Shown: piece after piece, positions 2,640 through 63,705 of the stretch | Numbering within the stretch: the first letter of the stretch is position 1 | Layout: each line of letters begins with the position of its first letter | Source of the DNA: Octopus sinensis | Taxonomy: Eukaryota | Assembly: GCF_006345805.1 (NCBI RefSeq) | Contig: NC_043020.1 | Location: 11,160,001 to 11,224,000, forward strand | DNA: 64,000 nucleotides | Reading direction: 5' to 3' | The notes under the pieces: model-generated | What the model saw: only the letters and a program-made list of their open reading frames with translations | Databases searched by the model: none | What the model was told of the DNA's origin: nothing | Program-made: the position numbers and the translations under genes

Positions 2640-3040
2640 TATATCATCATCATTGTTCGACCGTGGTCGAGACAATGGAATTTACCATGCTACTCCAGAC
2701 TTCATGGTCCATCATAGCATTACGGAAGTCCTGTTGGTGGATGCCTGTATCCCTGGAGATTACATCAGGGTAGGAGAGTGTGCGCCCTCTGGTATTGCAA
2801 GAAGAGTAGAAATTGCCTCGTTTTCAGCTCTAGAACAATGTCCAGCAAACTGGACTCTCCTACCTTTCACAAGAGATGACACAGGTGGTAGTTTCCCATA
2901 TATTTGCATTTTGGTTGGATGACGTTTCCACAAGAGATTTTGAGCTCTCATAAGGAGGCGAGTGTAGGTTCCATCCAACCGCCTCTCAAGCTTCTTTGAT
3001 AACGTCCAGGTTTCTGAGCCACATAGTAGAATTGGTTCGA
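2640..3040 (-). pseudogene. RTE-like LINE 3' fragment
   Basis: LDGTYTRLLMRAQN..W..HPT...YGKLPPVS...RRVQFAGHC; GAT-repeat tail. Confidence 0.75.
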
Positions 3041-3820
3041 CTGTGGCTTTGAAGATTTATATAGCTATAAATGTGGATTTCAAATTTTGGCACAAAGCCA
3101 GCAATTTTGGGGCAGGGGCTGAGTCAGTTGCATCTACCCCAGAATTCAACTGGTACACGTTTTATCGACCCCGAAAGGATGAAAACCAAAGTCAACCTCA
3201 GCAGAATTTGAACTCAGAACATAAAGACAGCCGAAACCTCACTAACAAGTCTGCCAGCTTGCTGCATTATACAGATATAGATATTGATTATTGATCTGCT
3301 TAGGACCTGTTCCCAATTTACGTGGGGTTACAGGGGACGTGAAACCTGATACTCAGCTAATTTCTTGGGTGCAGTAGGATCTGAACGCTTGCAACTGTAT
3401 GAACTCAGTTGAAGGCACCAGTCCAAGGGAGACAACCAAGTTGTGGTATGGGAAAGCGAACGATAGGATAAGTTTAGAAACCCTGCCTGTACGTTTTGTA
3501 GTAATTTTGTGGTTTATACACTCTTACCAGTTTCAGTCATTTGACTGTGGCCATGCTGGAGCACCGCCTTTAGTCGAGCAAACAGACCCCAGGACTTATT
3601 CTTTGTTTGCAAGCCTAGTACTTATTCTGTTGGTCCCTTTTGCCAAACTACTAAGTTATGGGGATGTAAAGCATCAGCATCGGTTGTCAAGCGATGTTCG
3701 GGGGGACAAACATAGACACACAAACATATACACACACATACATCAAAATGTGACCGCATGTGTACCGTTGGCGATTTTTTTCCCGCCGTCTTCCCTTCCT
3801 TGGATCTTTCCTTTTCCTAT

Positions 3821-6505: not shown

Positions 6506-6664
6506 ACTGGTAGAGAAGACTGGTTAATTGGTCGTGCCAATGCCAACAAAGTTGATTTAAATCGAAACTTTCCTGACCTCAACAACATCGTCTATGAAAA
6601 CGAGCAGACTCATGGAGCAAACAACCACCTCGAGAAGTTGGCATATGCATTGATAACACCAGAC
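6506..6664 (+). CDS. CPE: CPE-like exon
   Basis: ccacag/gtaagt boundaries; [25 protein letters not shown]...TPD with the DLNRNFP motif; 159 bp, phase 0/0. Confidence 0.95.
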
Positions 6665-7734
6665 GTAAGTAAATTTCTCCTTTAACCTTATATATATATA
6701 TATATATATCACCGTGACCGACCAGGCTATCAGATGTTGCTAAGCATCGCTGGTCACAATGCGCTTTGCATTGTTTAAGCCTTCAAATGACGCCACCCCG
6801 CTGGCTAAGCGAGCAGGCCAACAGAAGAAAGAGTGAGAGGAAGTTGTGGGGAAAGAATACAGCAGGGATCGCCCCCCCCCCCCTGCTGGAGCCTCGTGGT
6901 GCTTTAGGTGTTTTCGCTCAATAAACTCTCACAATGCCCAGTCTGGGAATCGAAACCGCGATTCTACAACCGCAAGTCCGCTGCCCTAACCACTGGGCCA
7001 TTGCGCCTCCATATATATATATATATATATTCTTTTGTTCTGTTATTAATTTCAGTGATTGAACTGTGGTCATACTGGAGTACCACCTCTAAACGGTTTT
7101 TTTGTCAGTTCTATCAATGGCAGTATCTCTATTGGCTTTGTACATCTATCCTTGTTTATCACTGATTTCCTTCATCCAAAAATCAAAATCACATTTGATG
7201 ACTGGCATCCGTACTAACGGGGTGCAAAGAGCACCATACGAGCATGATCGTTGACAGAGCGGCTAACCGGCTTCCATGCCAGTGGCACATAAAAGGCACC
7301 ATTCGAGTGTGATCGTTACCAGCGTCGCCTTACTGGCACTTGTGCCTGTGCTAGTAGGGTGCCAAGAGCACCATCCGAGCATGATTGTTGCCAGAGCAGC
7401 CAACTGGCTTCCGTGCCGGTGGCACATAAAAGGGCACCATTTGAGCGTGATCGTTACGAAAGTCGCCTTACTGGCACCAGTGCCGGTGGCATGAGTAAAA
7501 AGATTCGAGCGAGGACGTTGCCAGTACTGCCTGACTGGCCCCCGTGCTGGTGGCACATAAAAAACACCCACTACACTCTCGCAGTGGTTGGTGTTAGGAA
7601 GGGCATCCAGCTGTAGAAACTCTGCCATATCAAGATTGGAGCCTGGTGCAGCCAATTGGTTTGCCAGCCCTCAGTCAAAATCGTCCAACCCATGCTAGCA
7701 TGGAAAGCGGACGTTAAACAGTGATGATGATTAA

Positions 7735-8719
7735 TCTATGATAACACTATCCAATCAGTTGTGAAATATGTTCTACTTGCCATGAATTGATAACACAATG
7801 TGATGACTCGAGTTGATGATCAGTCAAAGATTCTGCTTGAACTGCAAAAGCATACCCCAGTGACCTTTAAAATGGAAGATAAGAAGGTTAATTTTCGGCA
7901 CCTGATGCTTTGGCAACCAGACAAAAATTGCTACAGCTCGGCCGGGATGTGTTACTCCACCCTCCGTATTCACCAGATATTGCTCCTTTGGATTTCCACT
8001 TATTCAGTTCTCTGCAGAATAGTTTTAATGGTAAAAATGTCAATTCCTTGGATGACGTAAAAAGATACCTTGATGAATTCTTTGCCATGAAACCACCTCA
8101 ATTCTGGGAAGAGGGTATTTTCAAGTTAAAGGAAAGATGAAGACGCATTGTGCAACAAAATGGTTCATATTTCATCATCATTTAGCATCCGCTTTCCATA
8201 CTAGCATGGGTTGGATGGTTCAACTGGGGTCTGGGAAGCCAGAAGGCTGCACCAGGCCCAGTCTGATCTGGCAATGTTTCTACGGCTGGATGCCCTTCCT
8301 AATGCCAACCACTCCGTGAGTGTAGTGGGTGCTTTTTACGTGCCAGACAAGGCTGGCAAACAGCCACGATCGGATGGTGCTTTTTACGTGTCACCAGCAC
8401 AGAGGCAGTTGGGGCAGCGCTGGCAATGGCCACCGGCACTGGTATCACAGCTACGATTTCCATTGATGTTGATCGATTTTGATTTTGTTTTTGATTTTGT
8501 TTTGGTTGATTAAAAATGTAGTGGCAAGTATTAGGTTGTCCCAAAAGTTCGTAAACACTTGCGAAAATTGACTATAACAATATAAACCCAAATAAACAAT
8601 TAAAAATTGCATAAAAATTCAAATTTTCGCAAGGTTTTTACGAACTTTTGGGACAACCTTATATTTATTGACCTTTTTCTTTCCTTTAAAAATCGGCACG
8701 TACTTTCCAGACAACCCAA
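7735..8719 (+). mobile_element. Internally deleted mariner transposon, nested with other insertions
   Basis: MEDKKVNFRHLMLW (ATG 7872) joined to ATRQKLLQLGRDVLLHPPYSPDIAPLDFHLF...; 3' TIR ...gacaacccaa plus TA at 8720; 5' TIR not found. Confidence 0.85.
8531..8661. mobile_element. Mariner-type MITE
   Basis: TIR ttaggttgtcccaaaagttcgtaa and its near reverse complement, TA target duplication. Confidence 0.8.
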
Positions 8720-8798
8720 TATTTTTATCTCAGTCAATGTCACCAGTATAGCACTTATCCTACCTTAATTCCAGTTGATGATATACTTCAACGATTGT

Positions 8799-8843
8799 CA
8801 CACGCTGATGAAAGGTAAACACCTTGAAACTCGGGTACGTGTG
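8799..8843 (+). ncRNA. Minimal type I hammerhead ribozyme, intact core
   Basis: Stem I cacacg/cgtgtg, CTGATGA, stem II aaggt-aaac-acctt, GAAA, stem III AC-tcgg-GT, GUA cleavage triplet ending 8837. Confidence 0.85.
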
Positions 8844-9059
8844 TATCATGTGTTGAAGACGGGGAGGATGACTCCCCTTCACAAATACTGACAGGACACA
8901 GGTAGTGTGTCTATAGCCAGCTGGAGGAGATATCTTCCTGGGGCTACAAACTACAGTAGCATCCACCCTTATGGGTTAGCCATATTCAAATGGCATATAT
9001 GCATCACAAAGTAAAAAACATTTACAGCCTAAGAATGTTTATAATTTCTTTCTTTGCAG

Positions 9060-9223
9060 CTAGAGTCGGAGACAAAGACAGTTATGAAATGGCTGAGTGC
9101 TTACCCATTTGTCCTGTCAGCTAATCTGCACGGTGGTGACTTGGTAGCTAACTACCCATATGATCTGACCCGCAGTGGTAAACAAAAAGAGTACAGTATC
9201 AGCCCCGATGATGCGACCTTCAG
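9060..9223 (+). CDS. CPE: CPE-like exon
   Basis: ttgcag/gttggt boundaries; [12 protein letters not shown]...[16 protein letters not shown]...SPDDATF(R) with the third zinc ligand His; phase 0/2. Confidence 0.95.
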
Positions 9224-10398
9224 GTTGGTTCACTTCTAGATTTTCTGGCCGGGGTTTCATTTGTTTGGTTGCAGCTTTGGTGATGTGACATCCATATTCA
9301 ACAGAACAAATCTCTGGAATCCCTTTACACACACGAACAAACATATATATTTCTTTACTACCCACAAGGGGCTAAACACAGAGAGGACAAACAACGACAG
9401 ACAAACGAATTAAGTCGATTATATCGACCCCAGTGCGTAACTGGTACTTATTTAATTGACCCCGAGAGGATGAAAGGCAAAGTCGACCTAGGCGGAATTT
9501 GAACTCAGAACGTAGCGGCAGACGAAATACCGCTAAGCATTTCGCCCGGCGTGCTAATATTTCTGCCAGTTTGCCACGAACAAACATATTATCATCATCA
9601 TCATTAACACCCGCTTTTCCATGATTGCATGTGTTGGTGGAGTTTATTGAAGCAGATTTTCTGTGACCAAATGCCTTTCTTGTTGCCAACTCTCATCTTT
9701 TCCAAGCAAGGTAATATTTCCCCATGGCCGGACATATTTTCATGGAATATTAGAAATGAATGACACTGCTTGTATGACAGTGATACTCGTTTACAATTAT
9801 CACATGATGTCAAGACGCGGAGACACAAGCCTACACATGCACTTAAACACACACACACACATGCCCATTTATATCATAATTATCACCACTGTTTTAACGT
9901 CCACTTTTTTATGCTGGCATGGGTTGGACAGAATTTAAAGGTGGCAAACTGGCAGAAATATTAGTACGCCGGGCGTAATGCTTAGCGGTATTTCATCTGA
10001 CTTTACATTCTGAGTTCAAATTCCGTCGAGCTTGACTTTGCCTCTCATCCTTTCAGGGTCGATAAATTAAGTACCAGTTACGCACTGGGGTCGGTGTAAT
10101 TGACTTAATCCCTTTGTCTGTCCTTGTTTGTCCCCTCTATGTTTAGCCCCTTGTGAGCAATAAAGAAATAAGAATTTAAGGTGGATTTTCCTCAGCCGAA
10201 ACTCTCTCCCATTTCCAAATAAGATAACATTCCCTATGACCAGACATGTTTTCTCAGAAGATGATGGTAATATTTATGTCCAACTATCACATGAAATCAA
10301 AGCAAGGCGCCAGTGACACACATGCACAGACACATAAACACGCAACAAACTTCTTTCACTTTCCATTTACCAAATCTACTCACAAGGCTTTGGTTGGC

Positions 10399-10865
10399 CT
10401 GGAAGTAGAGTACTTTACTTGTACGAGCTGGTTTCTTCTCTGGTCCTAACAGCATCACGAACCATGGCAGCCCACGCTCGATGGTCCCATGCGAAGTCAC
10501 TGGAGATAGTGAGCCATTCGCGGTTCCATCTGCGCAAACTGACCACCTGCGGACCTGAGAGTTCGGAGAGGTCCTTCTTTATCGTCGTTGCCCAGGTCTT
10601 CAGCTGCCCGCTCGTGCGTTTGCTCCAGCTGGGAAGTGGAGGTGGGAGGAGGACATCGCGAATCAGCTCACCCTCTGGATGCTGGGCCGTGTGACCGAAC
10701 CACCTTAAGTGCCGTTTATAGAAGCACCGAAGGGAGGGGCCGGAGATTCAGGCGATGACGAAACACCTCCAGCCTTCGCTGACCGACTACCCTCATAGGC
10801 CATGTTTCACAACCATTGAGGAAGATAGTACAAACGACGGCCTGGTAGATTCGCCCTTTGGTCAC
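10399..10865 (-). pseudogene. RTE-clade LINE 3' fragment
   Basis: IYQAVVCTIFLNGCETWPMRVVGQRRLEVF post-RT motif. Confidence 0.75.
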
Positions 10866-13763: not shown

Positions 13764-14093
13764 AAATAGATATAGATATTTTGAGTACTTTTTCTGTTTG
13801 TATGATCAACAAAAACAGTTTTAAAAATAAAAGAAGTATCTATTGACGATGAATATGTGAATGTAATTCCAGGTATGGAATATATATATACTTAATAATT
13901 AGGGTTCAGCAAAGATTTGCTTTACCACATACCGAAGTTTAGAAATAGCAGCCAAAACTTCGGTATGTGGTAAAGCAAATCTTTGCTGAACCCTAATTAT
14001 TAAGTATTACTCAAGTTTACCGTGAAATGCTCCTTTTTTCATGCTGAATTCTACTCGGTGAAATTATTGATTACTTCTTAATTAATTAGTTTT

Positions 14094-14221
14094 GATGAAG
14101 AGCGCGGCTATCCGCGTGAACTGATGCGAATTGCAGGACTCAGTGAACATCGACACCTCGAACGCACATTGCGGCCCCGGGATCCTATTGTCCCGGGGCC
14201 CCATCCTGTCGAGAGGCGGTC
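14094..14221 (+). rRNA. 5'-truncated 5.8S rRNA fragment (orphan pseudogene)
   Basis: GATGAAGAGCGC..GCGTGAA..GAATTGCAGGAC..TGAACATCGACACCTCGAACGCACATTGCGGCC and the GC-rich 3' hairpin match conserved 5.8S motifs; about 30 nt missing at the 5' end. Confidence 0.9.
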
Positions 14222-14351
14222 ACGACACGAAAACGCCGTCCGCCGTGGCCGTTGGCTGCGGCGGGGAGTCGGGAGTCGCAGGAAAGGGCACCGCTCGCCG
14301 CGAGGATGCGGCAGACGATTAAGAAGGAGGAGACTCGTTCTCGCTCCTTTT

Positions 14352-18351: not shown

Positions 18352-18895
18352 AATAATAATAATGAAATTATTGTATACAGTGCTCAGGTGCACCACAACT
18401 TGTCAGAAAGTGTGTATAAAGTACATGCAGTAATGTAGAAATGTCTGGAAAGCGAACAATGTATGAGTCAGATACATGCTTGTGTGTGTATGGAGGGAAG
18501 GAAATCAGGTGTAGTGTTGGCGAATCTCAGAAAGCATGGAAGTTTCGAAGGATGCAGTGCTCCGACAACTAACAACTGATGCCGGCAGTTTGTTCCATGC
18601 TTCAGCAACTCTCAGCGTGAAAAAATGTTTCCTAAAGTCATAGGAGCTGTGCTGTTTTCTGACTTTGTAAATATGTCCACGGGTGTTAGACGGGTGGAGT
18701 TTGAAAAGGTGCTCAGAGTTATTGTTTGTAAGATGGTTGATAATTTTATGGGTGTCTGCCGAGTCAGCTGCCAGACGTCGGAGTTTCAATGTGTCCATGC
18801 CCAGGGAAGTAAGGCGTTCAGAATATGGCAAATGGCTGATGGAGGGTATTCTTTTAGTTGCACGTCGCTGAACGGCTTCCAGACGATTAATATCG
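18352..18895 (-). pseudogene. CR1/L2-group LINE 3' fragment
   Basis: YSERLTSLGMDTLKLRRL...TRGH...RKHFFTLRVAEAWNKLP; ATT tail. Confidence 0.9.
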
Positions 18896-18910
18896 TGGGC
18901 AAGATATCTA

Positions 18911-19767
18911 TCTATATATATAAAACTCTAGTTGTGTGAGTGTCTGTCCCCTTCGATTTAGATTCCTAACTCCTCCCACATTTTGCGGTGCAGTTTAACC
19001 AAATTCGGGTATCTTATAGTCGTGATTCATATCGAGCCCGTCTGACTATTAGCGCGCGTCAACGATGAGTCTACGATTTTAAAAATAATTTAACATAATT
19101 TTTTATTCCATTTTAATGCATAAAATGCATCGTGTGTCGATGGCGGTGGAGTTGGCGTCCACGCTCACAGCTGCACCTGTTTGCTTCTCCCCCTTCCCTC
19201 CCTCGTGAAGCTGTGGGGAAGGGAGTGTAAAGAAATCGCCGGGCGATACTGCTAGTATATATATAAAACTGTAGTTGTGTGAGTGTCTGTCCCCTTCGAT
19301 TTAGATTCCTAACTACTCCCACATTTTGCGGTGCAGTTTAATCAAATTCGGGTATCTTATAGTCGTGATTCATATCGAGCCCGTCTGGGTATTAGCGTGC
19401 GTCTACGATGAGTCTACGATTTTAAAAATAATTTAACATCATTTTTTATTCCATTTTAATGCATATTTTTTCGTGTGTCGATGGCGGCGGAGTTGGCGTC
19501 CATAGTCACACCTGCACCTGTGTTGCTTCTCCCCCTTCTTCCCTCCCTGGTGAAGCTGTGGGGAAGGGAGTGTAAAGAAATCAACGTCGTAAAGCGTTGT
19601 CAAGGAGACCAGCGTTCTTTTAGAACAACGACTTCATGGCTTGAAGACACCAAAACAGAAATGGCTAAGAAAGCCCGAATTGGCATCTATAAGGGAAGTA
19701 ACTCTCTAAAAATGCTTATATAGTTATTTCCCTTACAAACCCGAGCAACGCCGGGCGATACTGCTAG
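18911..19767 (+). mobile_element. Two head-to-tail non-autonomous Helitrons (18911-19255, 19256-19767)
   Basis: Both end gggcgatactgCTAG; shared 5' module. Confidence 0.8.
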
Positions 19768-20343
19768 TATTTATATATGATTGCAAACCAAATGTGGCAT
19801 CCTATACAGCAGGTTAGCGACACATTCTGTGTCCAATTAGTATCTGCAAGGGGAGGTCGTTGCTCACATCGCTAGCTTTACGTGATACACGTAGACTCTA
19901 GTTTCATGGTTACCTGTCCTCGGTGTGTGTGAATCACCGCGACTGACTGTCTCTGGTTTTGAGAACAGGAGAAACAAACAATGTTAAATCTCTGAATGAG
20001 ATATAAACGGTAATAATACGGTATTGTAACATAATTGCCTGGCCAGCGGGAGGAGACGTCTTCACAGGGTTATAAACATCAGTAGCACTCTTCTGCACAG
20101 GATGCCATGCTTCGTTAGTAATTATACGTTAAGATTCCGTATTGCTACTCTTTTACTTGTTTTCTGTCATTTGACTGTGGCCACGCTGGGGCACCACCTT
20201 TAGTCGAGCAAATCGACCCCAGGACTTATTCTTTGTAAGCCTAGTACTTATTCTGTCGGTCTTCTTTTGCCGAACTGCTTAGTTACGGCGATGTAAACAC
20301 ACCAGAATCAGTTGTCAAGCGATGTTGTGGGTACAAACACAAG

Positions 20344-20428
<85 letters not shown>

Positions 20429-20967
20429 TATATGGTGGGCTTCTTTCAGTTTCCGTCTACCAAATCCACTCACAAGGCTTTGGTCGGCCCAAGGCTATAG
20501 TACAAGACATTTGCCCAAAGTGCTACGCAGTCAGTAAGCACGCTACTTACCACACAGCCACTCCTGCGCCTATACTGCTTATGTCTCGCTCAGAGATTTA
20601 ATATAGCTTATTTCTCCATTTTGGGATCAGCGACTGTTTGTCGCTGAAGAAAGCAGATAGTATTTTGCGAGTGGAGTGAATTTTCATCCACCCAGAAACT
20701 CGAGTCCATGTGTATCACATGAGGCTAGAGATGGGAGCGATGACCTCCTCTTGCAAATACTAATCGGACACAGAATGTGTGTTGCTCAGCAGCTAGTAGA
20801 GATGTCTTCCTGGGGCTATAAACGTCATTAGCACTGTCCTGTATAGGATGCTATGCTACTGTTTATATATTGCTTAGAGATTTAATATAGCCTATATATA
20901 TGTGTGTATGTATGTATGCATATATTTATCTGTGTGTGTGTGTGTGTATATATATGTATGTATATGA

Positions 20968-29028: not shown

Positions 29029-30264
29029 TGAAATTTCCCTGGCTGTACCAGGCTCCAATCTGATCTGGCAGAGTTTCTACAGCTGGATGCCCTTCCTAAT
29101 GCCAACCACTCCGAGAGTGTAGTGGTTGCTTTTATGTGCCACCAGCATCCTCGGATGGTGCTATTAGCACTCCACTAGCACGGATGCTATGAACGAAAGC
29201 ACTCAATGCATGCTGTAAAGTGGTTGGTATTAAGAAGGGCATCCAGCTGTAGAAACCATTCTGAACCAGATATTGGAGTATGAGGCTGTTCTGGGACCCA
29301 TCAGATCCTGTCAAACTGTCCATGCATGTCAACATGGGAGTGGGATGTTGAATGGTGATGATAAAGATGGTCCCACGCACACAGGCGGTACTGGCAATGG
29401 CCACGCTCAAATGGTGTTTTTTACGTGCCACTTGCACAAGAGCCAGTCCAGTGGCATTGGCAACAACCTCGTTTGAATGTTTTTTCACATACCACCGGCA
29501 CAAGTGCCAGTATGGCAGCGTAGGTAATGATCACACTCAAATGGTGCTTTTTACGTACCACTGGCATGGAAACCATTTAGCTGCTCTGGCAACGATCACG
29601 CTCGGATGGTGCTCTTAGCGCTCCACTAGCACGGATGCCAGTCATCGAATTTAATTTCGATCTCACTTGCCTCAACAGGTCTTCGCAAGCAGAGTTTAGT
29701 GTCCAATGAAGGAAAGGTACGCATAAGTGGGCTGGTTACACCCCTGGCATAGGTCACGAGGTTATGGTCTCACTTGGCTTGCCAAGTCTTCATCATCATC
29801 ATCATCATCATCGTTTAGCGTCCGCTTTCCATGCTAGCATGGGTTGGACGGTTCAACTGGGGTTTGGGAAGCCAGAAGGCTGCGCCAGGCCCAGTCTGAT
29901 CTGGCAGTGTTTCTACAGCTAGATGCCCTTCCTAACGCCAACCACTCCATGAGTGTAATGGGTGCTTTTTACGTGCCACCTGCACAGGTGCCAGACGAGG
30001 CTGGCAAACGGCCACGATCGGATGGTGCTTTTTACGTGCCACCACTAAATCATTATTTTTATTTCGTCAACCAATCATTTCCATGATTGTTTGTCTGTCT
30101 AATTGATTGTCTCAATGTCTCACTGATTGTTAATTTGACTGATTAAAAGTTTAGTTATTGATTTTTTTTTTTTATTGATTATTTAATCAACCAGTTGTCT
30201 TCCTGCTTATTTAATAGCCAATTGCTAGTGTGATGGTTTCACTGATTGCTTGTGTTCTCCACAG

Positions 30265-30404
30265 GAATGCAAGACTATAACTACCTGGAGACAAACTGTT
30301 TTGAGATCACCTTGGAACTTGGCTGTGATAAGTTCCCACCAGCTTCACAACTGAAAAAATATTGGAATGACAACAAGAACGCTCTAATTGCATACATGAT
30401 GCAG
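30265..30404 (+). CDS. CPE: CPE-like exon with catalytic Glu
   Basis: ccacag/gtaatt boundaries; (G)[24 protein letters not shown]...[14 protein letters not shown]; phase 1/0. Confidence 0.95.
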
Positions 30405-30544
30405 GTAATTAAATATTCCACCCTAACCCATCGTGTACCCACAGTTAAAAATTTCCATCTATGTTTCTATACTCCATACATATGACATTTAAATCCCGCC
30501 AACTTTTTACTGTACCTTCATACCTTTCTTAGTGATATCATTAC

Positions 30545-36504: not shown

Positions 36505-36631
36505 AATAGTGTACCACTTAAGGTACTGTGTTAAATTATTTAGCTCTTGTTCTTTTGATCACCACCAAATGTGTGACGTTGAGCAAAAGTCAAAAGAAGC
36601 CGTAATTTGAACTCTCGATCTCATGTTTCAG

Positions 36632-36864
36632 GTCACTATGGAGATTACTACCGACTAATGATTGATGGCTTCTATGAAGTTGAGGTGACGGCTAAGGGCT
36701 ACCACCCTCACACCCGCTGCCAAAGAGTCCAGAACAAACCCCTGCATGAAGCTGTTGAACTGAATTTTGAGTTGCTTTCACTGCATTACCCAAGCCAAAG
36801 AAACGTCCAGGACATTTTGCACTGCGACCAGCTGCGGGCTCTTGCCAGGAACCAACGAAATAAG
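36632..36864 (+). CDS. CPE: CPE-like penultimate coding exon (read-through would end NKVV* at 36873)
   Basis: tttcag acceptor; (G)HYGDYYRLMIDGFYEVEVTAKGY...VELNFEL...QRNK; donor aag/gtggtt, phase 1/0. Confidence 0.9.
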
Positions 36865-38159
36865 GTGGTTTGAAGTTTATATCTGCTTTTATCTTCCTGT
36901 TTTTGGTTTTTTTTCTTTCAACTTTCACCTTTTTCAGTATACATTTTGCACCATTGTACTGTACAAATGCAGAAAGACACACTACGCCCATATAGTATAT
37001 CACATTATACCACCCTATATAAATTTACAATGGATTGGAAGCACTCCGTCGGTTCCGACGACGAGGGTTCCGGTTGATCCGATCAACAGAACAGCCTGCT
37101 CATGGAATTAGCGTGCAAGTGGCTGAGCACTCCACAGACACGTGTACCCTTAACATAGTTCTCGGGGATATTCAGCGTGACACAGAGAGTGACAAGGCCG
37201 GCCCTTTGCAATACAGGTACAACAGAAACAGGAAGTAAGAGTGAGAGAAAGTTGTGGTGAAAGGGTACAGCATGGATCACCAGCATCCCCTGCCGGAGCC
37301 TTGTGGAGCTTTTAGGTGTTTTCACTCAATAAACACTCACAACGCCTGGTCTGGGAATCGAAACCGCGATCCTATGCCCGCGAGTCCGCTGCCCTAACCA
37401 CTGGGCCATTGCGCTTCCACTATATCACATTATACCACCCTATATAAATTTACAATATCACGTTGTTGGAGCTTTGACATTGGAGGTGGGGGCACCATAT
37501 ATAATTCCAATTAAGGTGGCAAGCTGGCAGAAACGTTAGCACGCCGGGCGAAATGCGTAACCGTATTTCATCTGCCGTTACGTTCTGAGTTCAAATTACG
37601 CCGAGGTCAACTTTGCCTTTCATCCTTTCGGGGTCGATAAATTAAGTACCAGTTACGCACTGGGGGCGATGTAATCGACTTAATCCGTTTGTCCCCTATG
37701 TATTTAGCCCCTTGTGGGTAGTAAAGAAATATATATAATTCCATGCATGAGCCTTACAAATCTTGTACTTCGATACAGCGACGTGGTCCGTCCCGTAAAT
37801 TCCCTTAAGACAACTACTGTGTCCGCCGCGCTACCGTGCCTGATATTGTAAGAAACAAACCGTAGCTCACGGTGTCACCCACGTATACGTGGACGTAGCC
37901 GCGCGGCCGTCGTGAAGTTGATAAAGCGACGTGGTCCAACCCGTCAAACACAGAAAGACACTACGCCCATATAGTATATCACACTATACCACCTTATATA
38001 AATTTACAATATCACGTTGTTGGAGCCTTGGCATTGGAGGTGGGGGCACCATATATAATTTCATGCACGAGCCTTACGTATCTTGTGCTTCATTAAAATA
38101 TGTGTATAAAATAGGTTAAAATGGAGATGTGTAGCATTTTTACATTATATAGGCAAGTG

Positions 38160-38558
38160 AAAATGAAAATGAAAATCAAAATCAAAATCGATCAACATCA
38201 ATGGAAATTGTAGCTGTGATACCAGTGCCGATGGCACGTAAGAGAACCTTCCGAACGTGGCCATTGCCAGCGCTGCCCCGACTGGCCTCCGTGCCGGTGG
38301 CACGTAAAATGCACCATCCGATTGTGGCCACTGCCAGCCACGTCTGGCCCCCGTGCAGGTGGCACATAAAAAGCACCCACTACACTCATGGAGTGGTTGG
38401 CGTTAGGAAGGGCATCCAGCTGTAGAAACACTGCCAGATCAGACTGGAGCCTGGCGCAGCCTTCTGGCTTCCCAGACCCCAGTTGAACCGTCCAACCCAT
38501 GCTAGCATGGAAAACGGACAATGATGATGATGATAATGATGATGATGATGATGATGAT
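38160..38558 (+). mobile_element. GAT-tailed interspersed retroposon family E; other copies about 7170-7730+, 8170-8500-, 21855-22345-, 29040-30050, 33040-33605+, 53700-53870-, 57355-57650-, 57800-58185-
   Basis: Shared GTGCCGGTGGCACGTAAAAAGCAC subrepeats, GGCGTTAGGAAGGGCATCCAGCTGTAGAAA and (GAT)n tail. Confidence 0.8.
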
Positions 38559-48360: not shown

Positions 48361-49001
48361 CCTTCCTCCCCTCTAATTTTCTTTTATAAACAAACCCTCA
48401 ATTTTTTCATTTTCCTATTTAAAATTATGACTGGAAATATTGTTTCTTTTCTTTAGTTGCTGTTAATGCATACATACAAACACACACAGGCATACATAAA
48501 CACACATACACAACTCTATACATGTATGTCCATACATGCATACATACATACATATATACATGCATGCATACATATATACATGAATACATATATACATGAA
48601 GGTGGGGAGCTGGCAGAAGCATTAGCACGCCGGGTGAAATGCTTAGCGGTATTTTGTCTGCCATTACGTTCTGAGTTCAAATTCCGCTGAGGTCGACTTT
48701 GCTTTCATCTTTCGGGGTCGATAAATTAAGTACCAGTTACGTACTGGGGTCGATGTAATTGACTTAGCACCTTTGTCTGCCCTTGTTTGTCCCCTCTATG
48801 TTTAGTCCCTTGTGGGCAATAAAGAAATAACATATATACATGCATACACACACACACACGCATGCACACATACACACACACAATTTTCATGAAGCATTGT
48901 TTTATATATATATTTAATGTAGGATAAAATTTTTTTTCAAAAAAATTTTATCAATGGCCAGCATATTAAAAAAATACCTTTAAAGGTTAAAATTATAAAC
49001 A

Positions 49002-52884: not shown

Positions 52885-54033
52885 ATACTAATAATAATAA
52901 TAATAAAAAAAAAAATTTCCATATGCATGAGGTCTATTTCATTATGTTGACTCCAATATTCCGATGGTACTTTGTTTTATCAATTCTAAAAAAAATAAAA
53001 GAATGAGTTGACATCAATTTTCATTCTTAACATACTTTATTATTAAGGCAGCGAGCTGGCAGAATCATTAGCACACTGGGCGAAATGCTTAATGGTATTT
53101 CACCCATGGCTACATTCTGAGTTCAAATTCCTCCGAGGTCGACTTTGCCTTTCACCCTTTCGGGGCTGATAAATTAAGTACCAGTGAAACACTGGGTTCA
53201 GTCTAATCAACTAGTCCACTCCTCCCACAAATTGCAGGCCTTGTGCCTTTAGCAGAAAGGACTATTATTATTATTCTGAGTTCTGAGTTCAAATCTCACG
53301 AAGGGTGACTTCCCTTGGTCGGGGATTATTGGGAGTGATAAAATAAACACATCATTGAAATGCTGGGGGGTCAATATAATCAACTGGCCCCTTCTCCTTC
53401 CAAATTTATGTGCTTGTGCCTATATTAGAAACATTGCATCATCATTAATGGTTTCTATGTATTATAGTTATGTATTCTTATTAAAGCTGCAAAAGTCTTC
53501 ACAAACTGTTATTTAGCGTTTCACATTACTATTCCTCAGACAGTTGCAATCTATATGTTTCACATCTGTCCGACAAATGGTAATGTGAAACCTTGAGTAA
53601 CAGTTTGCAGCTTCCATGAAAGCATATTACTCTACCTTCAGTATTCGAGTACTATTTTCTTTCCACCTCGTTTTGCATTTCTGTACTTACTTGTGTGTTA
53701 TACTTATCATCATCATCATCGTTTAACGTCCGCTTTCCATGCTAGCATGGGTTGGATGGTTCGACTGGGGTCTGGGAAGCCAGGAGGCTGCACCAGGCCC
53801 AGTTTGATCTGGCAGAAAAACTGCCAGATCTGGCAGAAACACTGCCAGATCGGACTGGGCCTGGCTAAGACAATAATGTTAATTAATGTTAATTAAAGAT
53901 TAATCATGATGATGATGATGATGATAATTATAGAAATAAACATGATACTAATAATAGGTTCTTTTATTATCCACGGGATCAAAAACAGAAAAAAAAAATA
54001 ACCAAAAATATTTACTGCCTAAAATAATTTTAA

Positions 54034-54878: not shown

Positions 54879-54991
54879 ATCTATCTATCTATCTACCTAT
54901 ATGTATGATATATATATATATGCATATATATATATATATATATTATACATATATATATATATATGCATATATATATATGCATATATAATAC

Positions 54992-55050
<59 letters not shown>

Positions 55051-55072
55051 CATATATTACAATACATATATA

Positions 55073-55107
<35 letters not shown>

Positions 55108-55127
55108 ATATATATATATGCATATAT

Positions 55128-55175
<48 letters not shown>

Positions 55176-55211
55176 ATACATATATATATATATACATATA
55201 TTATATATATA

Positions 55212-55244
<33 letters not shown>

Positions 55245-55320
55245 CATATTATATATATACATATATATATATATAATATACATATACAGTATATATATAT
55301 ATACTATATATATCATATAC

Positions 55321-55353
<33 letters not shown>

Positions 55354-55588
55354 CCATATATATATATATATATCATATACATATATATATATATATATAT
55401 ATAATAATATATATATACACATATATATATATACAATATATATATATATACACATATATATATATATTATACACATATATATATATATATACACATATAT
55501 ATATAGATACCACATATATATATATATATATACAATATATATATATATAATACAAATATATATATATACACATATATTATATACATCA

Positions 55589-55619
<31 letters not shown>

Positions 55620-55670
55620 ACAATATATATATATAATACAATATATATATATATACACATATATATATAT

Positions 55671-55715
<45 letters not shown>

Positions 55716-55922
55716 ATATATTATACAAATATATATATTATATATATATTATATAACATATATATATATACATATATATATATACACATATATAATATAT
55801 AACATATATATATATATACACATAATATACTACATATATATATATATACATATATATTATATATATATACACATATATATATATATACACATATATATAA
55901 CACATATATAATATATATACAC

Positions 55923-55969
<47 letters not shown>

Positions 55970-56001
55970 ATATATATATACACATATATATATATATACA
56001 C

Positions 56002-56074
<73 letters not shown>

Positions 56075-56119
56075 CAATATATATATATATATACAATTAT
56101 ATATATATATAACAATATA

Positions 56120-56151
<32 letters not shown>

Positions 56152-56235
56152 CAATATATATATATAATATATATATATATACACATATATATATATATAT
56201 ATATACACATACACACACACATATATATCTATATA

Positions 56236-56277
<42 letters not shown>

Positions 56278-56304
56278 CACATACACACACACATATATAT
56301 ATAT

Positions 56305-56336
<32 letters not shown>

Positions 56337-56361
56337 ATATATATTACACATACACACACAC

Positions 56362-56415
<54 letters not shown>

Positions 56416-56486
56416 CATACCACACAAACATATAATATATATATATATATATATATAACATTATATATATATATATATATACACAT

Positions 56487-56575
<89 letters not shown>

Positions 56576-56599
56576 CACACACAATATATATATATATAT

Positions 56600-56631
<32 letters not shown>

Positions 56632-56636
56632 CACAT

Positions 56637-56669
<33 letters not shown>

Positions 56670-56704
56670 CACATACACACACATATATATATATATATAC
56701 ACAT

Positions 56705-56794
<90 letters not shown>
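54879..56794. repeat. About 1.9-kb interrupted (TA)n/(CA)n microsatellite
   Basis: Direct inspection. Confidence 0.98.
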
Positions 56795-57061
56795 CTCTAT
56801 TTTGTCTGCAATAAACATTCCAGTGTGTATATAGTTGATTATAGAATAAATGTCATTTGAACTGCATTTGTTGTCTTGCATTTATCTTTTTTTGTTTACT
56901 TATTTCAGTCATTGAACTGTGGCCATGCTGGGGCAACCACATGATTCTGGGTTCAGTCCCACTGCATGGCACCTTGGGAAAGTGTCTTCTACTATAGCAG
57001 CAGGCTGACCAAAACCTTGTCAGTGGGTTTGGTGGATGGAAACTGAAAGAAGCCTGTGTGT

Positions 57062-61394: not shown

Positions 61395-61978
61395 TAAATT
61401 CGTCCAGGATATCATCTTCGAAGATAGGAAGGTGAGTAGGAGCAATGTCGAGGATGATTAGGGCAACCAAAAGAATACCCTCCATCAGGCATTTGCCATA
61501 TCCTGAACGCCTTACTTCCCTGGGCATGGACACATTGAAACTCCGACATCTGGCAGCTGACTTCGCAGACACCCATAAAATTATCAACCATCTTACAAAC
61601 AATAACTCTGAGCACCTTTTCAAACTCCACCCGTCTAACACCCGTGGACATATTTACAAAATCAGAAAACAGCACAGCTCCCATGACTTTAGGAAACGTT
61701 TTTTCACGCTGAGAGTTGCTGAAGCATGGAACAAACTGCCGGCATCAGTTGTTAGTTGTCGGAGCACTGCATCCTTCAAAACTTCCATGCTTCCTGAGAT
61801 TCACCAACACTACACCTGATTTTCTCTCCCCTCCATACACACACAAGCATGTATCTGACTCATACATTGTTCGCTTTCCAGACATTTTTACATTACTGCA
61901 TGTACTTTATATGCACTTTCTGACAAGTTGTGGTGCACCTGAGCACTGTATACAATAATTTCATTATTATTATTATAA
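61395..61978 (+). pseudogene. CR1/L2-group LINE 3' fragment, same family as 18352-18895
   Basis: Near-identical sequence and ORF; ATT tail. Confidence 0.9.
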
Positions 61979-63139: not shown

Positions 63140-63424
63140 CTCTATCCGCTCAGTCGAAGTCGACTCTCGGTCACTCGTTGGATCAGTGTCCTCCAGTCAG
63201 TTCTATCCTGGGCCGCTTCTTTCAGCCTGGCTATGTCCATTCCGGTATCACTCTTGATGGTGTCAAGCCAGTGGGTTCTTGGTCAGCCTCTTCCTCTCTT
63301 GCCACTGACCATTCCGAGCATGATGTCCTTCTCTAGGGATTTTCTCCGCATAATATGACCAAAATATGCCAATCTATGCTTGGTGATCCTAGCTTCTAGC
63401 GACATTTTCGGCCTGATCTGCTTA

Positions 63425-63471
<47 letters not shown>

Positions 63472-63705
63472 CTCAGTCGAAGTCGACTCTCGGTCACTCG
63501 TTGGATCAGTGTCCTCCAGTCAGTTCTATCCTGGGCCGCTTCTTTCAGATTGGCTATGTCCATTCCGGTATCATTCTTGATGGTGTCAAGCCAGCGGGTT
63601 CTTGGTCGGCCTCTTCCTCTCTTGCCACTGACCATTCCGAGCATGATGTCCTTCTCTAGGGATTTTCTCCACATAATATGACCGAAATATGCCAATCTAT
63701 GCCAT
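63140..63705 (-). pseudogene. Two tandem RTE (BovB-like) 3' fragments; short copy also at about 6008-6102
   Basis: YFGHIMWRKSLEKDIMLGMVSGKRGRGRPRTRWLDTIK...QDRTDWR. Confidence 0.85.

What the first reader, a model, noticed from the sequence alone, without database searches (positions are those of the whole stretch)
8799..8843. Fully intact minimal hammerhead ribozyme on the sense strand of a CPE intron
Seen: perfect 6-bp stem I (cacacg/cgtgtg), CUGAUGA, 5-bp stem II (AAGGU/ACCUU), GAAA, 2-bp stem III around a wobble-palindromic CUCGGG, and a GUA site after 8837, about 220 nt upstream of the acceptor of the His-ligand exon (9060). Established: PLE-derived minimal hammerheads can cleave as dimers through such palindromes, and intronic self-cleaving ribozymes exist in vertebrate genes. 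Inference: this is the best-preserved of about ten motifs in the window and could cut the CPE pre-mRNA and influence splicing or output. Minimal hammerheads are often slow in vivo, so it may be neutral.
Basis: partly seen in the sequence, partly recalled or inferred. Interest (0 to 1): 0.75.

Follow-up and report, generated by a model that had tools for sequence, protein, structure and literature searches.

The report
Retrozyme-type hammerhead relic in carboxypeptidase intron
A real hammerhead self-cleaving RNA motif sits in an intron of a carboxypeptidase E-like gene, but it is one stray copy of a ~280-base mobile repeat of a well-known kind, is predicted to fold mostly into an inactive shape, and nothing suggests that it regulates the gene.

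Summary
The motif is at 8799-8843 (+) exactly as described: CACACG | CUGAUGA | AAGGU-AAAC-ACCUU | GAAA | CUCGGG | UA^ | CGUGUG. It lies on the sense strand of a 2,395-nt phase-0 intron (6665-9059) of an M14 carboxypeptidase E-like gene. It is not chance: a strict descriptor hit 0 of 300 shuffles, and the motif sits at the same position in a ~274-284-nt repeat with three further copies at 19.8-20.9 kb.

Architecture, unit size, GC content (0.43-0.44) and a head-to-tail 1.14-unit copy match metazoan non-LTR retrozymes and Penelope-associated hammerhead repeats. They fit the "minimal" Penelope variant less well.

"Fully intact" overstates it:
- It has A10.1-U11.1 where G10.1-C11.1 is the usual pair.
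- Its loop-3 palindrome carries a change found in no other copy (CUCGAG to CUCGGG). This change is predicted to weaken dimerisation (-3.5 vs -10.7 kcal/mol) and to strengthen a misfold that pairs core CUGA with UCGG (p about 0.95).
- No Rfam hammerhead model scores it.

The other copies have broken cores. "About ten motifs" is close to chance (10 vs 5.4±2.3). Two distant orthologous introns lack the element.

Verdict: an ordinary solo transposon relic, probably neutral. Conservation in close relatives could not be tested.

The parts
8799..8804 (+). Helix I, 5' strand (CACACG)
   Evidence: pairs perfectly with 8838-8843.
8805..8811 (+). Core box C3-A9 (CUGAUGA)
   Evidence: In the predicted minimum-free-energy fold, C3-A6 pair with UCGG of loop 3.
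8812..8825 (+). Helix II hairpin: AAGGU-AAAC-ACCUU, or 4 bp plus loop UAAACA. Positions 10.1-11.1 are A-U, not G-C.
   Evidence: pair probabilities 0.87-0.96.
8826..8829 (+). Core box G12 A13 A14 A15.1 (GAAA)
8830..8835 (+). Helix III / loop 3: C15.2, tetraloop UCGG, G16.2 (CUCGGG). This is a wobble palindrome; the other copies have CUCGAG or CUAGAG.
8836..8837 (+). U16.1 and A17. The predicted cleavage site is between 8837 and 8838 (GUA^C).
   Evidence: The other copies have GUC.
8838..8843 (+). Helix I, 3' strand (CGUGUG)
8786..8858 (+). Extended hammerhead: closing stem CUUCAAC (8786-8792) / GUUGAAG (8852-8858), and internal loop 1 (GAUUGU / UAUCAUGU) flanking the 6-bp helix I.
   Evidence: minimum-free-energy and centroid folds of the whole unit.
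8722..8995 (+). Solo (monomer) copy of the ~274-nt hammerhead-bearing repeat unit, GC 0.44. The boundaries are approximate.
   Evidence: nhmmer, alignment A2, GC.
20573..20895 (+). Second copy on the sense strand: one 284-nt unit plus the first 39 nt of a second unit, head to tail (20573-20611 repeats at 20857-20895, 33/39 identical). The hammerhead is degenerate (helices I and II broken), but GAAA-CUCGAG-UC is retained.
19781..20030 (-). Inverted copy. The hammerhead relic has U4 changed to C (CCGAGGA), a truncated helix II, and loop 3 CUAGAG.
20040..20144 (+). Partial copy (3' third of the unit, no hammerhead), abutting the inverted copy head to head.
6506..6664 (+). Upstream carboxypeptidase exon (..DLNRNFPD..). 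The donor GT is at 6665.
9060..9224 (+). Downstream carboxypeptidase exon (..[16 protein letters not shown]..). The acceptor AG is at 9058-9059.

Best explanation
The motif is the ribozyme of one solo copy of a ~275-285-nt non-autonomous, hammerhead-bearing retroelement. This is the metazoan 'non-LTR retrozyme' / Penelope-associated class. The copy inserted in sense orientation into the 2.4-kb intron of a carboxypeptidase E-like gene.

In the element's own life cycle, tandem units are transcribed. Two hammerheads pair through the palindromic loop 3 to build a long shared helix III, or fold individually, and cut out unit-length RNA that is circularised and reverse-transcribed. This step is inferred from published work on the class.

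At this locus the copy is alone. It keeps every invariant core nucleotide and helices I and II. Against activity, it has a non-canonical A10.1-U11.1 pair and a copy-specific A-to-G change in loop 3. It is also predicted to sit almost entirely in a conformer in which core C3-A6 pair with loop-3 UCGG. It therefore most likely cleaves the pre-mRNA slowly or not at all. Because slow intronic cleavage does not prevent splicing, it most likely has no effect on carboxypeptidase output. It is a neutral transposon relic that happens still to look like a ribozyme.
For: (1) The motif is exact and non-random.

(2) It is part of a repeat family. nhmmer finds copies at 20581-20899 (+), 19781-20004 (-) and 20040-20144 (+). 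The hammerhead lies at the homologous position in the two longer copies, with GAAAC-palindrome-GUH-GUGUAUCA conserved.

(3) The family features match published retrozymes.
- Unit length is 274-284 nt and GC is 0.43-0.44.
- One copy is a head-to-tail 1.14 unit with a 284-nt period.
- An inverted pair of copies is present.
- The unit RNA is highly self-paired, z = -2.7.
- Helix I is 6 bp followed by loop 1 and a closing stem. Helix II is 4-5 bp. Helix III is A-U plus C-G capped by a palindromic tetraloop.
- This is the same layout as the cloned mussel (GAAAC-GCGC-GUC) and coral (GAAAC-AGUACU-GUC) retrozyme hammerheads (PMC7229834) and as the 'canonical' metazoan type I described in PMC4209133.

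(4) Predicted inactivity.
- The active monomer fold is -7.4 kcal/mol against a minimum free energy of -13.0.
- The probability of the active fold is 4.5e-5, and the CUGA:UCGG pairs have probability about 0.95.
- The misfold persists in the 281-nt context.
- Net homodimer gain is only -3.5 kcal/mol, against -10.7 for the CUCGAG form carried by another copy.

(5) The other copies are decayed, so there is no intact partner in the transcript.

(6) Literature.
- A single Penelope-type motif showed no detectable cleavage, and dimers cleaved poorly (PMC4209133).
- About 44% of Xenopus retrozyme-homologous copies are intronic, and monomers are spread evenly along chromosomes.
- Introns cleaved by a slow hammerhead are still spliced efficiently; only a fast ribozyme aborts splicing (PMC2995048).

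(7) Two distant orthologous loci have ~0.5-kb introns here, with no hammerhead and no homology to the family.
Against: - The 45-nt motif has no disabling change, although this copy is the most divergent of the three in the repeat body (21 unique differences in 100 aligned sites). If all of that divergence arose after insertion, an intact hammerhead would be unlikely by chance (roughly 0.79^35). The simpler reading is that the copy belongs to a different subfamily, but this could not be checked without genome-wide copies.
- Four of the unit's five CpGs lie inside the extended hammerhead. This is a weak hint of differential preservation, and it was inconclusive on inspection.
- A cloned single mussel retrozyme hammerhead with the same helix III format does cleave, at about 0.1 per minute, so some activity cannot be excluded.
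- Thermodynamic predictions ignore tertiary contacts, proteins and co-transcriptional kinetics.
- No autonomous Penelope ORF and no true tandem array occur in the window.
- No Rfam hammerhead model matches, so the family assignment rests on architecture.
Confidence: 0.8

Rival explanations
1. Exapted intronic ribozyme. The hammerhead is kept by selection and cleaves the carboxypeptidase pre-mRNA, alone or with a partner RNA supplying the other strand of helix III. It would thereby tune splicing or output, like the conserved intronic hammerheads of amniote RECK, CTCL and DTNB.
For: - Sense-strand position 222 nt from the acceptor.
- All invariant core positions and helices I and II are intact, although the body of this copy is highly divergent.
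- CpGs are retained within the hammerhead.
- A precedent for domestication exists (PMC6155905).
- Helper strands exist on the same transcript: ACUCGAGU at 7806-7813 and in the copy at 20698-20705.
Against: - Predicted misfold and weak dimerisation.
- The loop-3 change and the A10.1-U11.1 pair go in the wrong direction for activity.
- The element is absent from two orthologous introns, although both are distant.
- There are no recognisable conserved loop-loop contacts and no match to Rfam HH9 or HH10.
- Slow intronic hammerhead cleavage does not affect splicing.
- The 7806 octamer is an isolated match in unrelated sequence.
- Intronic monomers of this class are common.
Confidence: 0.06
2. The copy is a fragment of the terminal repeat (pLTR) of an autonomous Penelope-like element that was truncated on insertion. 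It is not a copy of a short non-autonomous retrozyme.
For: - Penelope pLTRs always carry type-I hammerheads.
- Most genomic copies are single, truncated and sometimes in inverted pairs 100-700 bp apart (PMC4209133). The window shows such an inverted pair at 19781-20144.
- Retrozymes and pLTRs are phylogenetically interleaved.
Against: - No RT or GIY-YIG ORF lies next to any copy; the only long ORFs nearby look like LINE tails or low-complexity sequence.
- The 284-nt head-to-tail period fits a short unit.
- The hammerhead has a helix III, a 6-bp helix I, a short helix II and no bulged base after A9. This is unlike the Penelope min-HHR description.
Confidence: 0.2
3. A chance match to the hammerhead consensus in AT-rich intronic DNA.
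For: Loose descriptors give hits near the background rate (10 against 5.4 +/- 2.3). One such hit lies on the minus strand at 53504-53545. No Rfam model supports the motif.
Against: The strict descriptor gave 0 hits in 300 shuffles, and the relaxed one 0.063 per window. The motif also occupies the homologous position of a repeat whose other copies carry recognisable decayed hammerheads with the same GAAAC-palindrome-GUH block.
Confidence: 0.01

Closest known systems
Metazoan non-LTR retrozymes (Cervera & de la Pena 2020, PMC7229834): short tandem repeats with a type-I hammerhead, expressed as circRNAs in coral, mussel and axolotl
   Same: - Type-I topology and a 6-bp helix I with an internal loop 1.
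- Helix II of 4-5 bp.
- Helix III consisting of the A15.1-U16.1 pair, one further C-G pair and a palindromic tetraloop. The mussel construct reads GAAAC-GCGC-GUC.
- Unit of ~280 nt and GC below 45%.
- A head-to-tail junction in one copy, and a strongly self-paired unit RNA.
   Different: - It has A10.1-U11.1 instead of G-C.
- The loop-3 palindrome is weakened to a wobble palindrome.
- Neither expression nor circRNA could be checked.
- No sequence similarity to the published coral, mussel or axolotl units is claimed.
Penelope-like element min-HHRs (Cervera & de la Pena 2014, PMC4209133; Lunse, Weinberg & Breaker 2017, as cited in PMC6765202)
   Same: Type-I hammerhead carried by a retroelement. 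Palindromic 15.2-16.2 / loop 3 that allows a double-hammerhead dimer. Mostly dispersed single copies, sometimes in inverted pairs. Low expected activity as a monomer.
   Different: The published min-HHRs usually lack helix III, have a long helix II (6-8 bp) with an unpaired base after A9, a short helix I (4-5 bp) and a conserved G10.1-C11.1. This motif has none of these four features, and no Penelope ORF is nearby.
Conserved intronic hammerheads of amniotes (HH9 in RECK, HH10 in CTCL, DTNB; de la Pena & Garcia-Robles 2010, summarised in PMC6155905)
   Same: A type-I hammerhead on the sense strand of an intron of a protein-coding gene, thought to derive from retroelement hammerheads.
   Different: Those motifs are ultraconserved across classes, keep the canonical loop 1-loop 2 tertiary contacts and are matched by the Rfam models. 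Here there is no Rfam match, no evidence of conservation, and decayed paralogues lie nearby.
Newt satellite 2 and ASBVd hammerheads (Forster et al. 1988, as cited in PMC4209133 and PMC6155905)
   Same: Helix III is too weak for the monomer. Activity comes through a double hammerhead formed by two copies.
   Different: Those occur as tandem copies on one transcript. This locus has one intact copy only.

Membership tests
Hammerhead ribozyme, type I | Invariant core: C3 U4 G5 A6 N7 G8 A9, G12 A13 A14, the A15.1-U16.1 pair, and H17 (not G) | tested here: met
   CUGAUGA at 8805-8811, GAAA at 8826-8829, U at 8836, A at 8837.
Hammerhead ribozyme, type I | Three helices around the core, with the open ends in helix I | tested here: met
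   Helix I is 6 bp plus a 7-bp closing stem. Helix II is 5 bp. Helix III is only A-U plus C-G with a tetraloop. Helix III is absent from the predicted minimum-free-energy fold.
Hammerhead ribozyme, type I | G10.1-C11.1 pair at the base of helix II (highly conserved in natural hammerheads) | tested here: not met
   A (8812) pairs with U (8825). The conservation of G10.1-C11.1 is stated in PMC4209133.
Hammerhead ribozyme, type I | Match to a curated covariance model (Rfam Hammerhead_1, Hammerhead_3, Hammerhead_II, HH9, HH10) | tested here: not met
   No hammerhead hit at gathering score. None at E <= 10 in the listed matches for the window (150 of 190 matches listed), nor on 251 nt or 81 nt.
Hammerhead ribozyme, type I | Site-specific self-cleavage giving 5'-OH and 2',3'-cyclic phosphate ends | not testable with these tools
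   Needs a transcription/cleavage assay or end mapping.
Metazoan non-LTR retrozyme | Canonical-type type-I hammerhead: helix I of 6 bp, helix II of about 4 bp, short helix III with a palindromic loop | tested here: met
   Compare the descriptions and the mussel and coral constructs.
Metazoan non-LTR retrozyme | Repeat unit of about 170-400 bp with GC below 45% | tested here: met
   Units of 274 and 284 nt, GC 0.44 and 0.44; the third copy has GC 0.43.
Metazoan non-LTR retrozyme | Head-to-tail tandem arrays (dimers to multimers) | tested here: inconclusive
   One copy is 1.14 units with a 284-nt period. The copy under study is a monomer. There is no array in the 64 kb, and the rest of the genome is not available.
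Metazoan non-LTR retrozyme | Expression as unit-length linear and circular RNA | not testable with these tools
   No transcriptome access.
Penelope-like element min-HHR | Located in the terminal repeats flanking an RT plus GIY-YIG ORF | tested here: not met
   No such ORF lies near any copy. This was a limited test: ORF inspection plus a Pfam scan of ten candidates. Most published copies are also solo.
Penelope-like element min-HHR | No or minimal helix III, long helix II (6-8 bp) with an unpaired base after A9, short helix I (4-5 bp) | tested here: not met
   Helix III is present (2 bp plus tetraloop), helix II is 5 bp without a bulge, and helix I is 6 bp plus an extension.
Penelope-like element min-HHR | Palindromic 15.2-16.2 / loop 3 that allows a dimeric double hammerhead | tested here: met
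   CUCGGG self-pairs with two G-U wobbles. Cofolding returns the double-hammerhead topology at -29.5 kcal/mol, but the net gain is only -3.5.
Domesticated intronic hammerhead (HH9/HH10 type) | Conservation at the orthologous intron position across species | tested here: inconclusive
   The element is absent from two orthologous loci (L013, L014). These are distant (exons 72-74% identical) and have ~0.5-kb introns. No close relative was found.
Domesticated intronic hammerhead (HH9/HH10 type) | Canonical loop 1-loop 2 tertiary contacts that give fast cleavage as a monomer | tested here: inconclusive
   An internal loop 1 and a 4-6-nt loop 2 exist, but the contact nucleotides cannot be verified from sequence. 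There is no HH9 or HH10 model match.

The most novel reading that the evidence does not exclude
The hammerhead has been retained by selection after insertion. In that case its intact core, despite a body that differs at about 21% of sites from its paralogues, would not simply reflect subfamily origin. It would act as a conditional intronic ribozyme, switched on when a helper RNA carrying ACUCGAGU opens the CUGA:UCGG misfold and completes helix III. Possible helpers are another family transcript, or the octamer 1 kb upstream in the same intron. This would be an independent, invertebrate-lineage domestication analogous to amniote HH9 in RECK.
Probability: 0.05. Interest if true: 0.6.

Novelty: new member of a known kind. 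Interest (0 to 1): 0.25.

Why it matters
If the ordinary reading holds, the value is in annotation. The locus is a clean example of a solo retrozyme-type hammerhead repeat in a gene intron, and it shows that curated Rfam models miss this class entirely. It also shows that 'all core nucleotides present' is not the same as 'active': one loop-3 transition is predicted both to weaken the dimer and to lock the core into a misfold.

Only if the motif proved conserved in related species and active in vivo would it matter more widely. It would then be a second, independent case of a retroelement hammerhead being co-opted inside a protein-coding gene.

Tried and rejected
1. Rfam at gathering and at permissive thresholds on 64 kb, 251 nt and 81 nt found no hammerhead family.

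2. A scan of JGI metagenome contigs for the family-specific block GAAACTNGRGTNNNNGTGTATCA gave 12 hits. None has a hammerhead 5' half upstream, so they are chance matches.

3. Orthologous-intron test.
- The exon peptide search found only distant relatives, at most 85% identity over part of a very conserved exon.
- Two fetched loci have short introns without the element.
- The window's own exon-1 ORF is not on record.
- The organism therefore remains unidentified and no close relative could be examined.

4. Pfam on ten TE-like or exon ORFs confirmed only the concatenated carboxypeptidase exons as Peptidase_M14. No RT or GIY-YIG domain was found.

5. A CpG-retention comparison between the hammerhead and the body gave numbers too small and patterns too mixed to interpret.

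6. My first reading of the 20.6-kb copy took CTGAAGA at 20644 as its core box. The three-way alignment suggests that this lies in a 14-nt insertion. Under either reading its helices I and II are broken.

7. The paper by Lunse et al. on dimeric Penelope hammerheads is not held in the library. It is cited only through PMC6765202.

8. The ACTCGAGT octamer at 7806-7813 was considered as a cis helper for helix III. The surrounding sequence shows no element, so it is treated as coincidence.

Full report
OBSERVATION. The sequence at 8799-8843 on the + strand reads CACACG CTGATGA AAGGT AAAC ACCTT GAAA CTCGGG TA CGTGTG. A descriptor scan I wrote for type-I hammerheads recovers it as the only complete motif on either strand of the window. 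In standard numbering:
- Helix I is 6 bp (8799-8804 with 8838-8843).
- C3-A9 is CUGAUGA (8805-8811).
- Helix II is 5 bp with loop AAAC (8812-8825).
- G12-A15.1 is GAAA (8826-8829).
- Helix III is the A15.1-U16.1 pair plus C8830-G8835, closing the tetraloop UCGG.
- H17 is A8837, so the scissile bond would be 8837/8838.

GENE CONTEXT. Carboxypeptidase exons lie on the same strand at about 1293-1499 (HGNE..NPDG), at 6506-6664 (DLNRNFPD) and at 9060-9224 (ANLHGG). The exon ending at 6664 is followed by GTAAGT, and the exon starting at 9060 is preceded by a pyrimidine tract and AG. The junction is phase 0. The intron is therefore 6665-9059, and the cleavage site lies 222 nt from the acceptor. The three concatenated exon pieces hit Pfam Peptidase_M14 at E = 2.9e-42. 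Several of the best-matching database fragments are named 'carboxypeptidase E' by their source.

CHANCE. In 300 dinucleotide-preserving shuffles of the window, a relaxed type-I descriptor gave 0.063 hits per window. A strict one (helix I of at least 6 bp, helix II of at least 5 bp, short palindromic helix III) gave none. The stronger argument is homology, described next.

WHAT IT BELONGS TO.
- BLAST and nhmmer of the surrounding sequence against the window find three further copies of the same repeat: 20581-20899 (+), 19781-20004 (-) and a 3' fragment at 20040-20144 (+).
- In the three-way alignment, the block GAAAC-palindrome-GUH-(N)GUGUAUCA and about 130 nt downstream are clearly homologous. 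A shared leader (..TCAGAGATTTAA..) lies upstream.
- The copy at 20.6 kb carries a 39-nt direct repeat of its own start at its end (20573-20611 against 20857-20895, 33/39 identical), giving a period of 284 nt. Because the other copies share that leader, this is a head-to-tail junction (1.14 units) and not a target-site duplication.
- Unit length is 274-284 nt and GC is 0.43-0.44.
- The unit RNA folds well below shuffled controls (z = -2.7).
- In that fold, helix I continues beyond its 6 bp through an internal loop (GAUUGU / UAUCAUGU) into a 7-bp closing stem (8786-8792 / 8852-8858).

COMPARISON WITH THE LITERATURE.
- Cervera & de la Pena (PMC4209133) describe the usual metazoan type-I hammerhead as follows: helix I of 6 bp, helix II of 4 bp, and helix III of 1-2 bp capped by a 2-4-nt palindromic loop. 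It is unstable as a monomer and active as a dimer of neighbouring copies.
- The same authors describe the Penelope 'min-HHR' as lacking helix III. It has a 6-8-bp helix II, an unpaired base after A9, a 4-5-bp helix I and a conserved G10.1-C11.1.
- The 2020 paper (PMC7229834) assigns the canonical type-I motifs to 'non-LTR retrozymes': tandem repeats of about 170-400 nt with GC below 45%, expressed as self-paired circRNAs.
- Their cloned mussel and coral units read GAAAC-GCGC-GUC and GAAAC-AGUACU-GUC. This is the same helix III format as GAAAC-UCGG-GUA here.
[quoted passage not shown] In Xenopus it finds that about 44% of copies overlap introns and that monomers are spread evenly along chromosomes.
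- On architecture, unit size, GC and the head-to-tail junction, the window's family fits the retrozyme description. It fits the Penelope min-HHR description poorly.
- No RT or GIY-YIG ORF adjoins any copy.
- The inverted juxtaposition of copies at 19781-20144 matches the 'opposite-strand pairs' noted for this class.

HOW INTACT IS IT? All invariant core positions are present, but three points temper 'fully intact'.
1. Positions 10.1-11.1 are A-U, whereas G-C is described as highly conserved. From my own knowledge of hammerhead biochemistry, G10.1 forms part of the A9/G10.1 metal site, so replacing it usually lowers activity. I found no open paper quantifying this.
2. The palindrome differs from its paralogues. 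This copy has CUCGGG, while the others have CUCGAG and CUAGAG. The G at 8834 is therefore most simply a change specific to this copy. The GUA triplet is also specific to this copy (the others have GUC), but it still satisfies the requirement for H17.
3. No Rfam hammerhead model scores the motif, even at E <= 10 on 81 nt.

The other two copies that carry the hammerhead region are clearly dead. The inverted copy has U4 changed to C and a truncated helix II. The 20.6-kb copy has broken helices I and II. One tidier hit of this kind lies on the minus strand at 53504-53545. It has no helix III and is compatible with the background rate.

PREDICTED BEHAVIOUR.
- Folded alone, the 45-mer adopts a structure at -13.0 kcal/mol that keeps helices I and II but pairs core C3-A6 (CUGA) with loop-3 UCGG. 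Those pairs have probability about 0.95.
- The catalytically required fold is worth -7.4 kcal/mol and has an ensemble probability of 4.5e-5.
- The same misfold appears in the minimum-free-energy and centroid structures of the 281-nt unit.
- Two copies cofold into the double-hammerhead topology at -29.5 kcal/mol. This is a net gain of only 3.5 kcal/mol over two misfolded monomers, which is negligible for intermolecular association at cellular RNA concentrations.
- Replacing G8834 by A in silico, giving the CUCGAG form carried by another copy, weakens the misfold to -10.3 and raises the dimer gain to -10.7 kcal/mol. The copy-specific transition is thus predicted to hurt both routes to activity.
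- These are nearest-neighbour predictions. They ignore tertiary contacts, proteins and folding kinetics. A single cloned mussel unit with the same helix III format cleaves at about 0.1 per minute, so slow cleavage cannot be excluded.

CONSEQUENCE FOR THE GENE. Even if some cleavage occurs, published in vivo work shows that introns cut by a slow hammerhead are spliced as efficiently as intact ones (exon tethering). Only a fast ribozyme aborts processing (PMC2995048, summarising Dye et al. 2006 and Fong et al. 2009). The only other sense-strand copy in the transcript is 11.8 kb downstream and is itself dead. It could at most lend its ACUCGAGU strand. An isolated ACTCGAGT octamer at 7806-7813 in the same intron could do the same, but it lies in unrelated sequence and is best treated as coincidence.

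CONSERVATION.
- No close relative of the source genome could be found. The best exon matches are 71-85% identical, in one of the most conserved stretches of the enzyme. The window's own exon-1 ORF is not on record.
- Two orthologous loci from unnamed ENA assemblies were fetched. Their exons are 72-74% identical in nucleotides to the window's, and the corresponding introns are only about 0.5 kb. They contain no hammerhead and no homology to the repeat. This agrees with a lineage-specific insertion but is too distant to test for selection.
- A metagenome scan for the family's conserved block returned only chance matches.

THE ONE LOOSE END.
- In a three-way comparison of the repeat body, this copy has 21 unique differences in 100 aligned sites, against 7 and 19 for the other two.
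- If all of that divergence arose after insertion, a hammerhead without any disabling change would be improbable.
- The more economical reading is that the copy comes from a different subfamily, whose master kept a working ribozyme for its own transposition. Its much more divergent leader (26 unique differences in 68 sites) points the same way.
- Four of the unit's five CpGs lie within the extended hammerhead. Site-by-site inspection gave no interpretable pattern.
- This is why a small probability (about 5%) is reserved for post-insertion selection. A genome-wide census and the orthologous intron of close relatives are the decisive tests.

VERDICT. The thing is a solo copy of a retrozyme-type (Penelope-associated) hammerhead repeat, a known kind of element whose intronic monomers are common. 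The ribozyme is formally complete but deviates from the canonical form, and it is predicted to be largely locked in an inactive fold. There is no evidence that it affects the carboxypeptidase gene. It is a new member of a known kind, of low to moderate interest.

Noticed in passing
window 14089-14350 (+): A 5'-truncated 5.8S rRNA (model positions 30-154, 80 bits, E = 2.5e-18) is followed by about 130 nt of GC-rich, ITS2-like sequence and then a (TA)n run, inside an intron of the carboxypeptidase gene. It looks like an rDNA fragment captured or retroposed into the gene.
   Followed up: partly
window 8526-8666 (+), also 8698-8724: A MITE-like element lies immediately upstream of the hammerhead repeat: 44-nt terminal inverted repeats (8526-8569 / 8622-8666, 91% complementary), plus an extra partial terminal repeat at 8698-8724. 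It produces weak spurious Rfam hits (WsnRNA46, mir-266).
   Followed up: partly
window 13900-13995 (+): A near-perfect ~40-nt inverted repeat (tagggttcagcaaagatttgctttaccacataccgaagtt ... its complement), which looks like another small MITE or hairpin element.
   Followed up: no
window 53504-53545 (-): A loose hammerhead-like match (aactgt CTGAGGA atagtaatgt GAAA cgctaaata acagtt) with a 6-bp helix I, but a weak 3-bp helix II and no helix III. It is compatible with the chance rate of 0.06 per window.
   Followed up: partly
window 19781-20144: A minus-strand copy and a plus-strand 3' fragment of the hammerhead repeat abut head to head. About 430 nt further on comes the 1.14-unit copy, separated from them by SINE-like sequence and (CA)n(TA)n microsatellites. 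This may be a rearranged former array.
   Followed up: partly
window 8429-8498; 38166-38235 (-); 58116-58185 (+): A 70-nt segment is repeated at 94% identity in three places. It belongs to a young dispersed repeat that also gives related ORF fragments (..DALPNANHS.SVVGAFYVPP..) at 7.3, 8.2, 38.3 and 57.4-58.2 kb.
   Followed up: no
window 2763-3056 (-), 10418-10747 (-), 18508-18927 (-), 61436-61816 (+), 63399-63704 (-), 58088-58390 (-): ORF fragments that by eye resemble C-terminal tails and RT pieces of non-LTR (LINE-type) retrotransposons. Five of the six were scanned and none reached a Pfam domain at E <= 0.01. 18508-18927 (-) and 61436-61816 (+) are two copies of one family.
   Followed up: partly
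window 54900-56900, also 785-880, 1060-1145 and 48500-48600: Long (TA)n/(TG)n-type microsatellite tracts account for nearly all sub-threshold Rfam 'miRNA' hits (mir-297, mir-3149, mir-1277 and others). These are low-complexity artefacts.
   Followed up: yes
window 30252-30407 (+) and 36583-36870 (+): Further carboxypeptidase exons. 30252-30407 aligns to both orthologous loci. 36583-36870 encodes a ..GDYYRLMIDGFYEVEVTAKGY.. segment that by eye resembles the C-terminal transthyretin-like domain; Pfam gave no hit on it. The gene spans at least 36 kb of the window, with introns far longer than in the two distant orthologues.
   Followed up: partly
window 7806-7813 (+): The octamer ACTCGAGT lies 1 kb upstream in the same intron. 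It is exactly the strand that would complete helix III of the hammerhead in trans or in cis. The surrounding sequence shows no repeat homology, so it is probably coincidence.
   Followed up: yes
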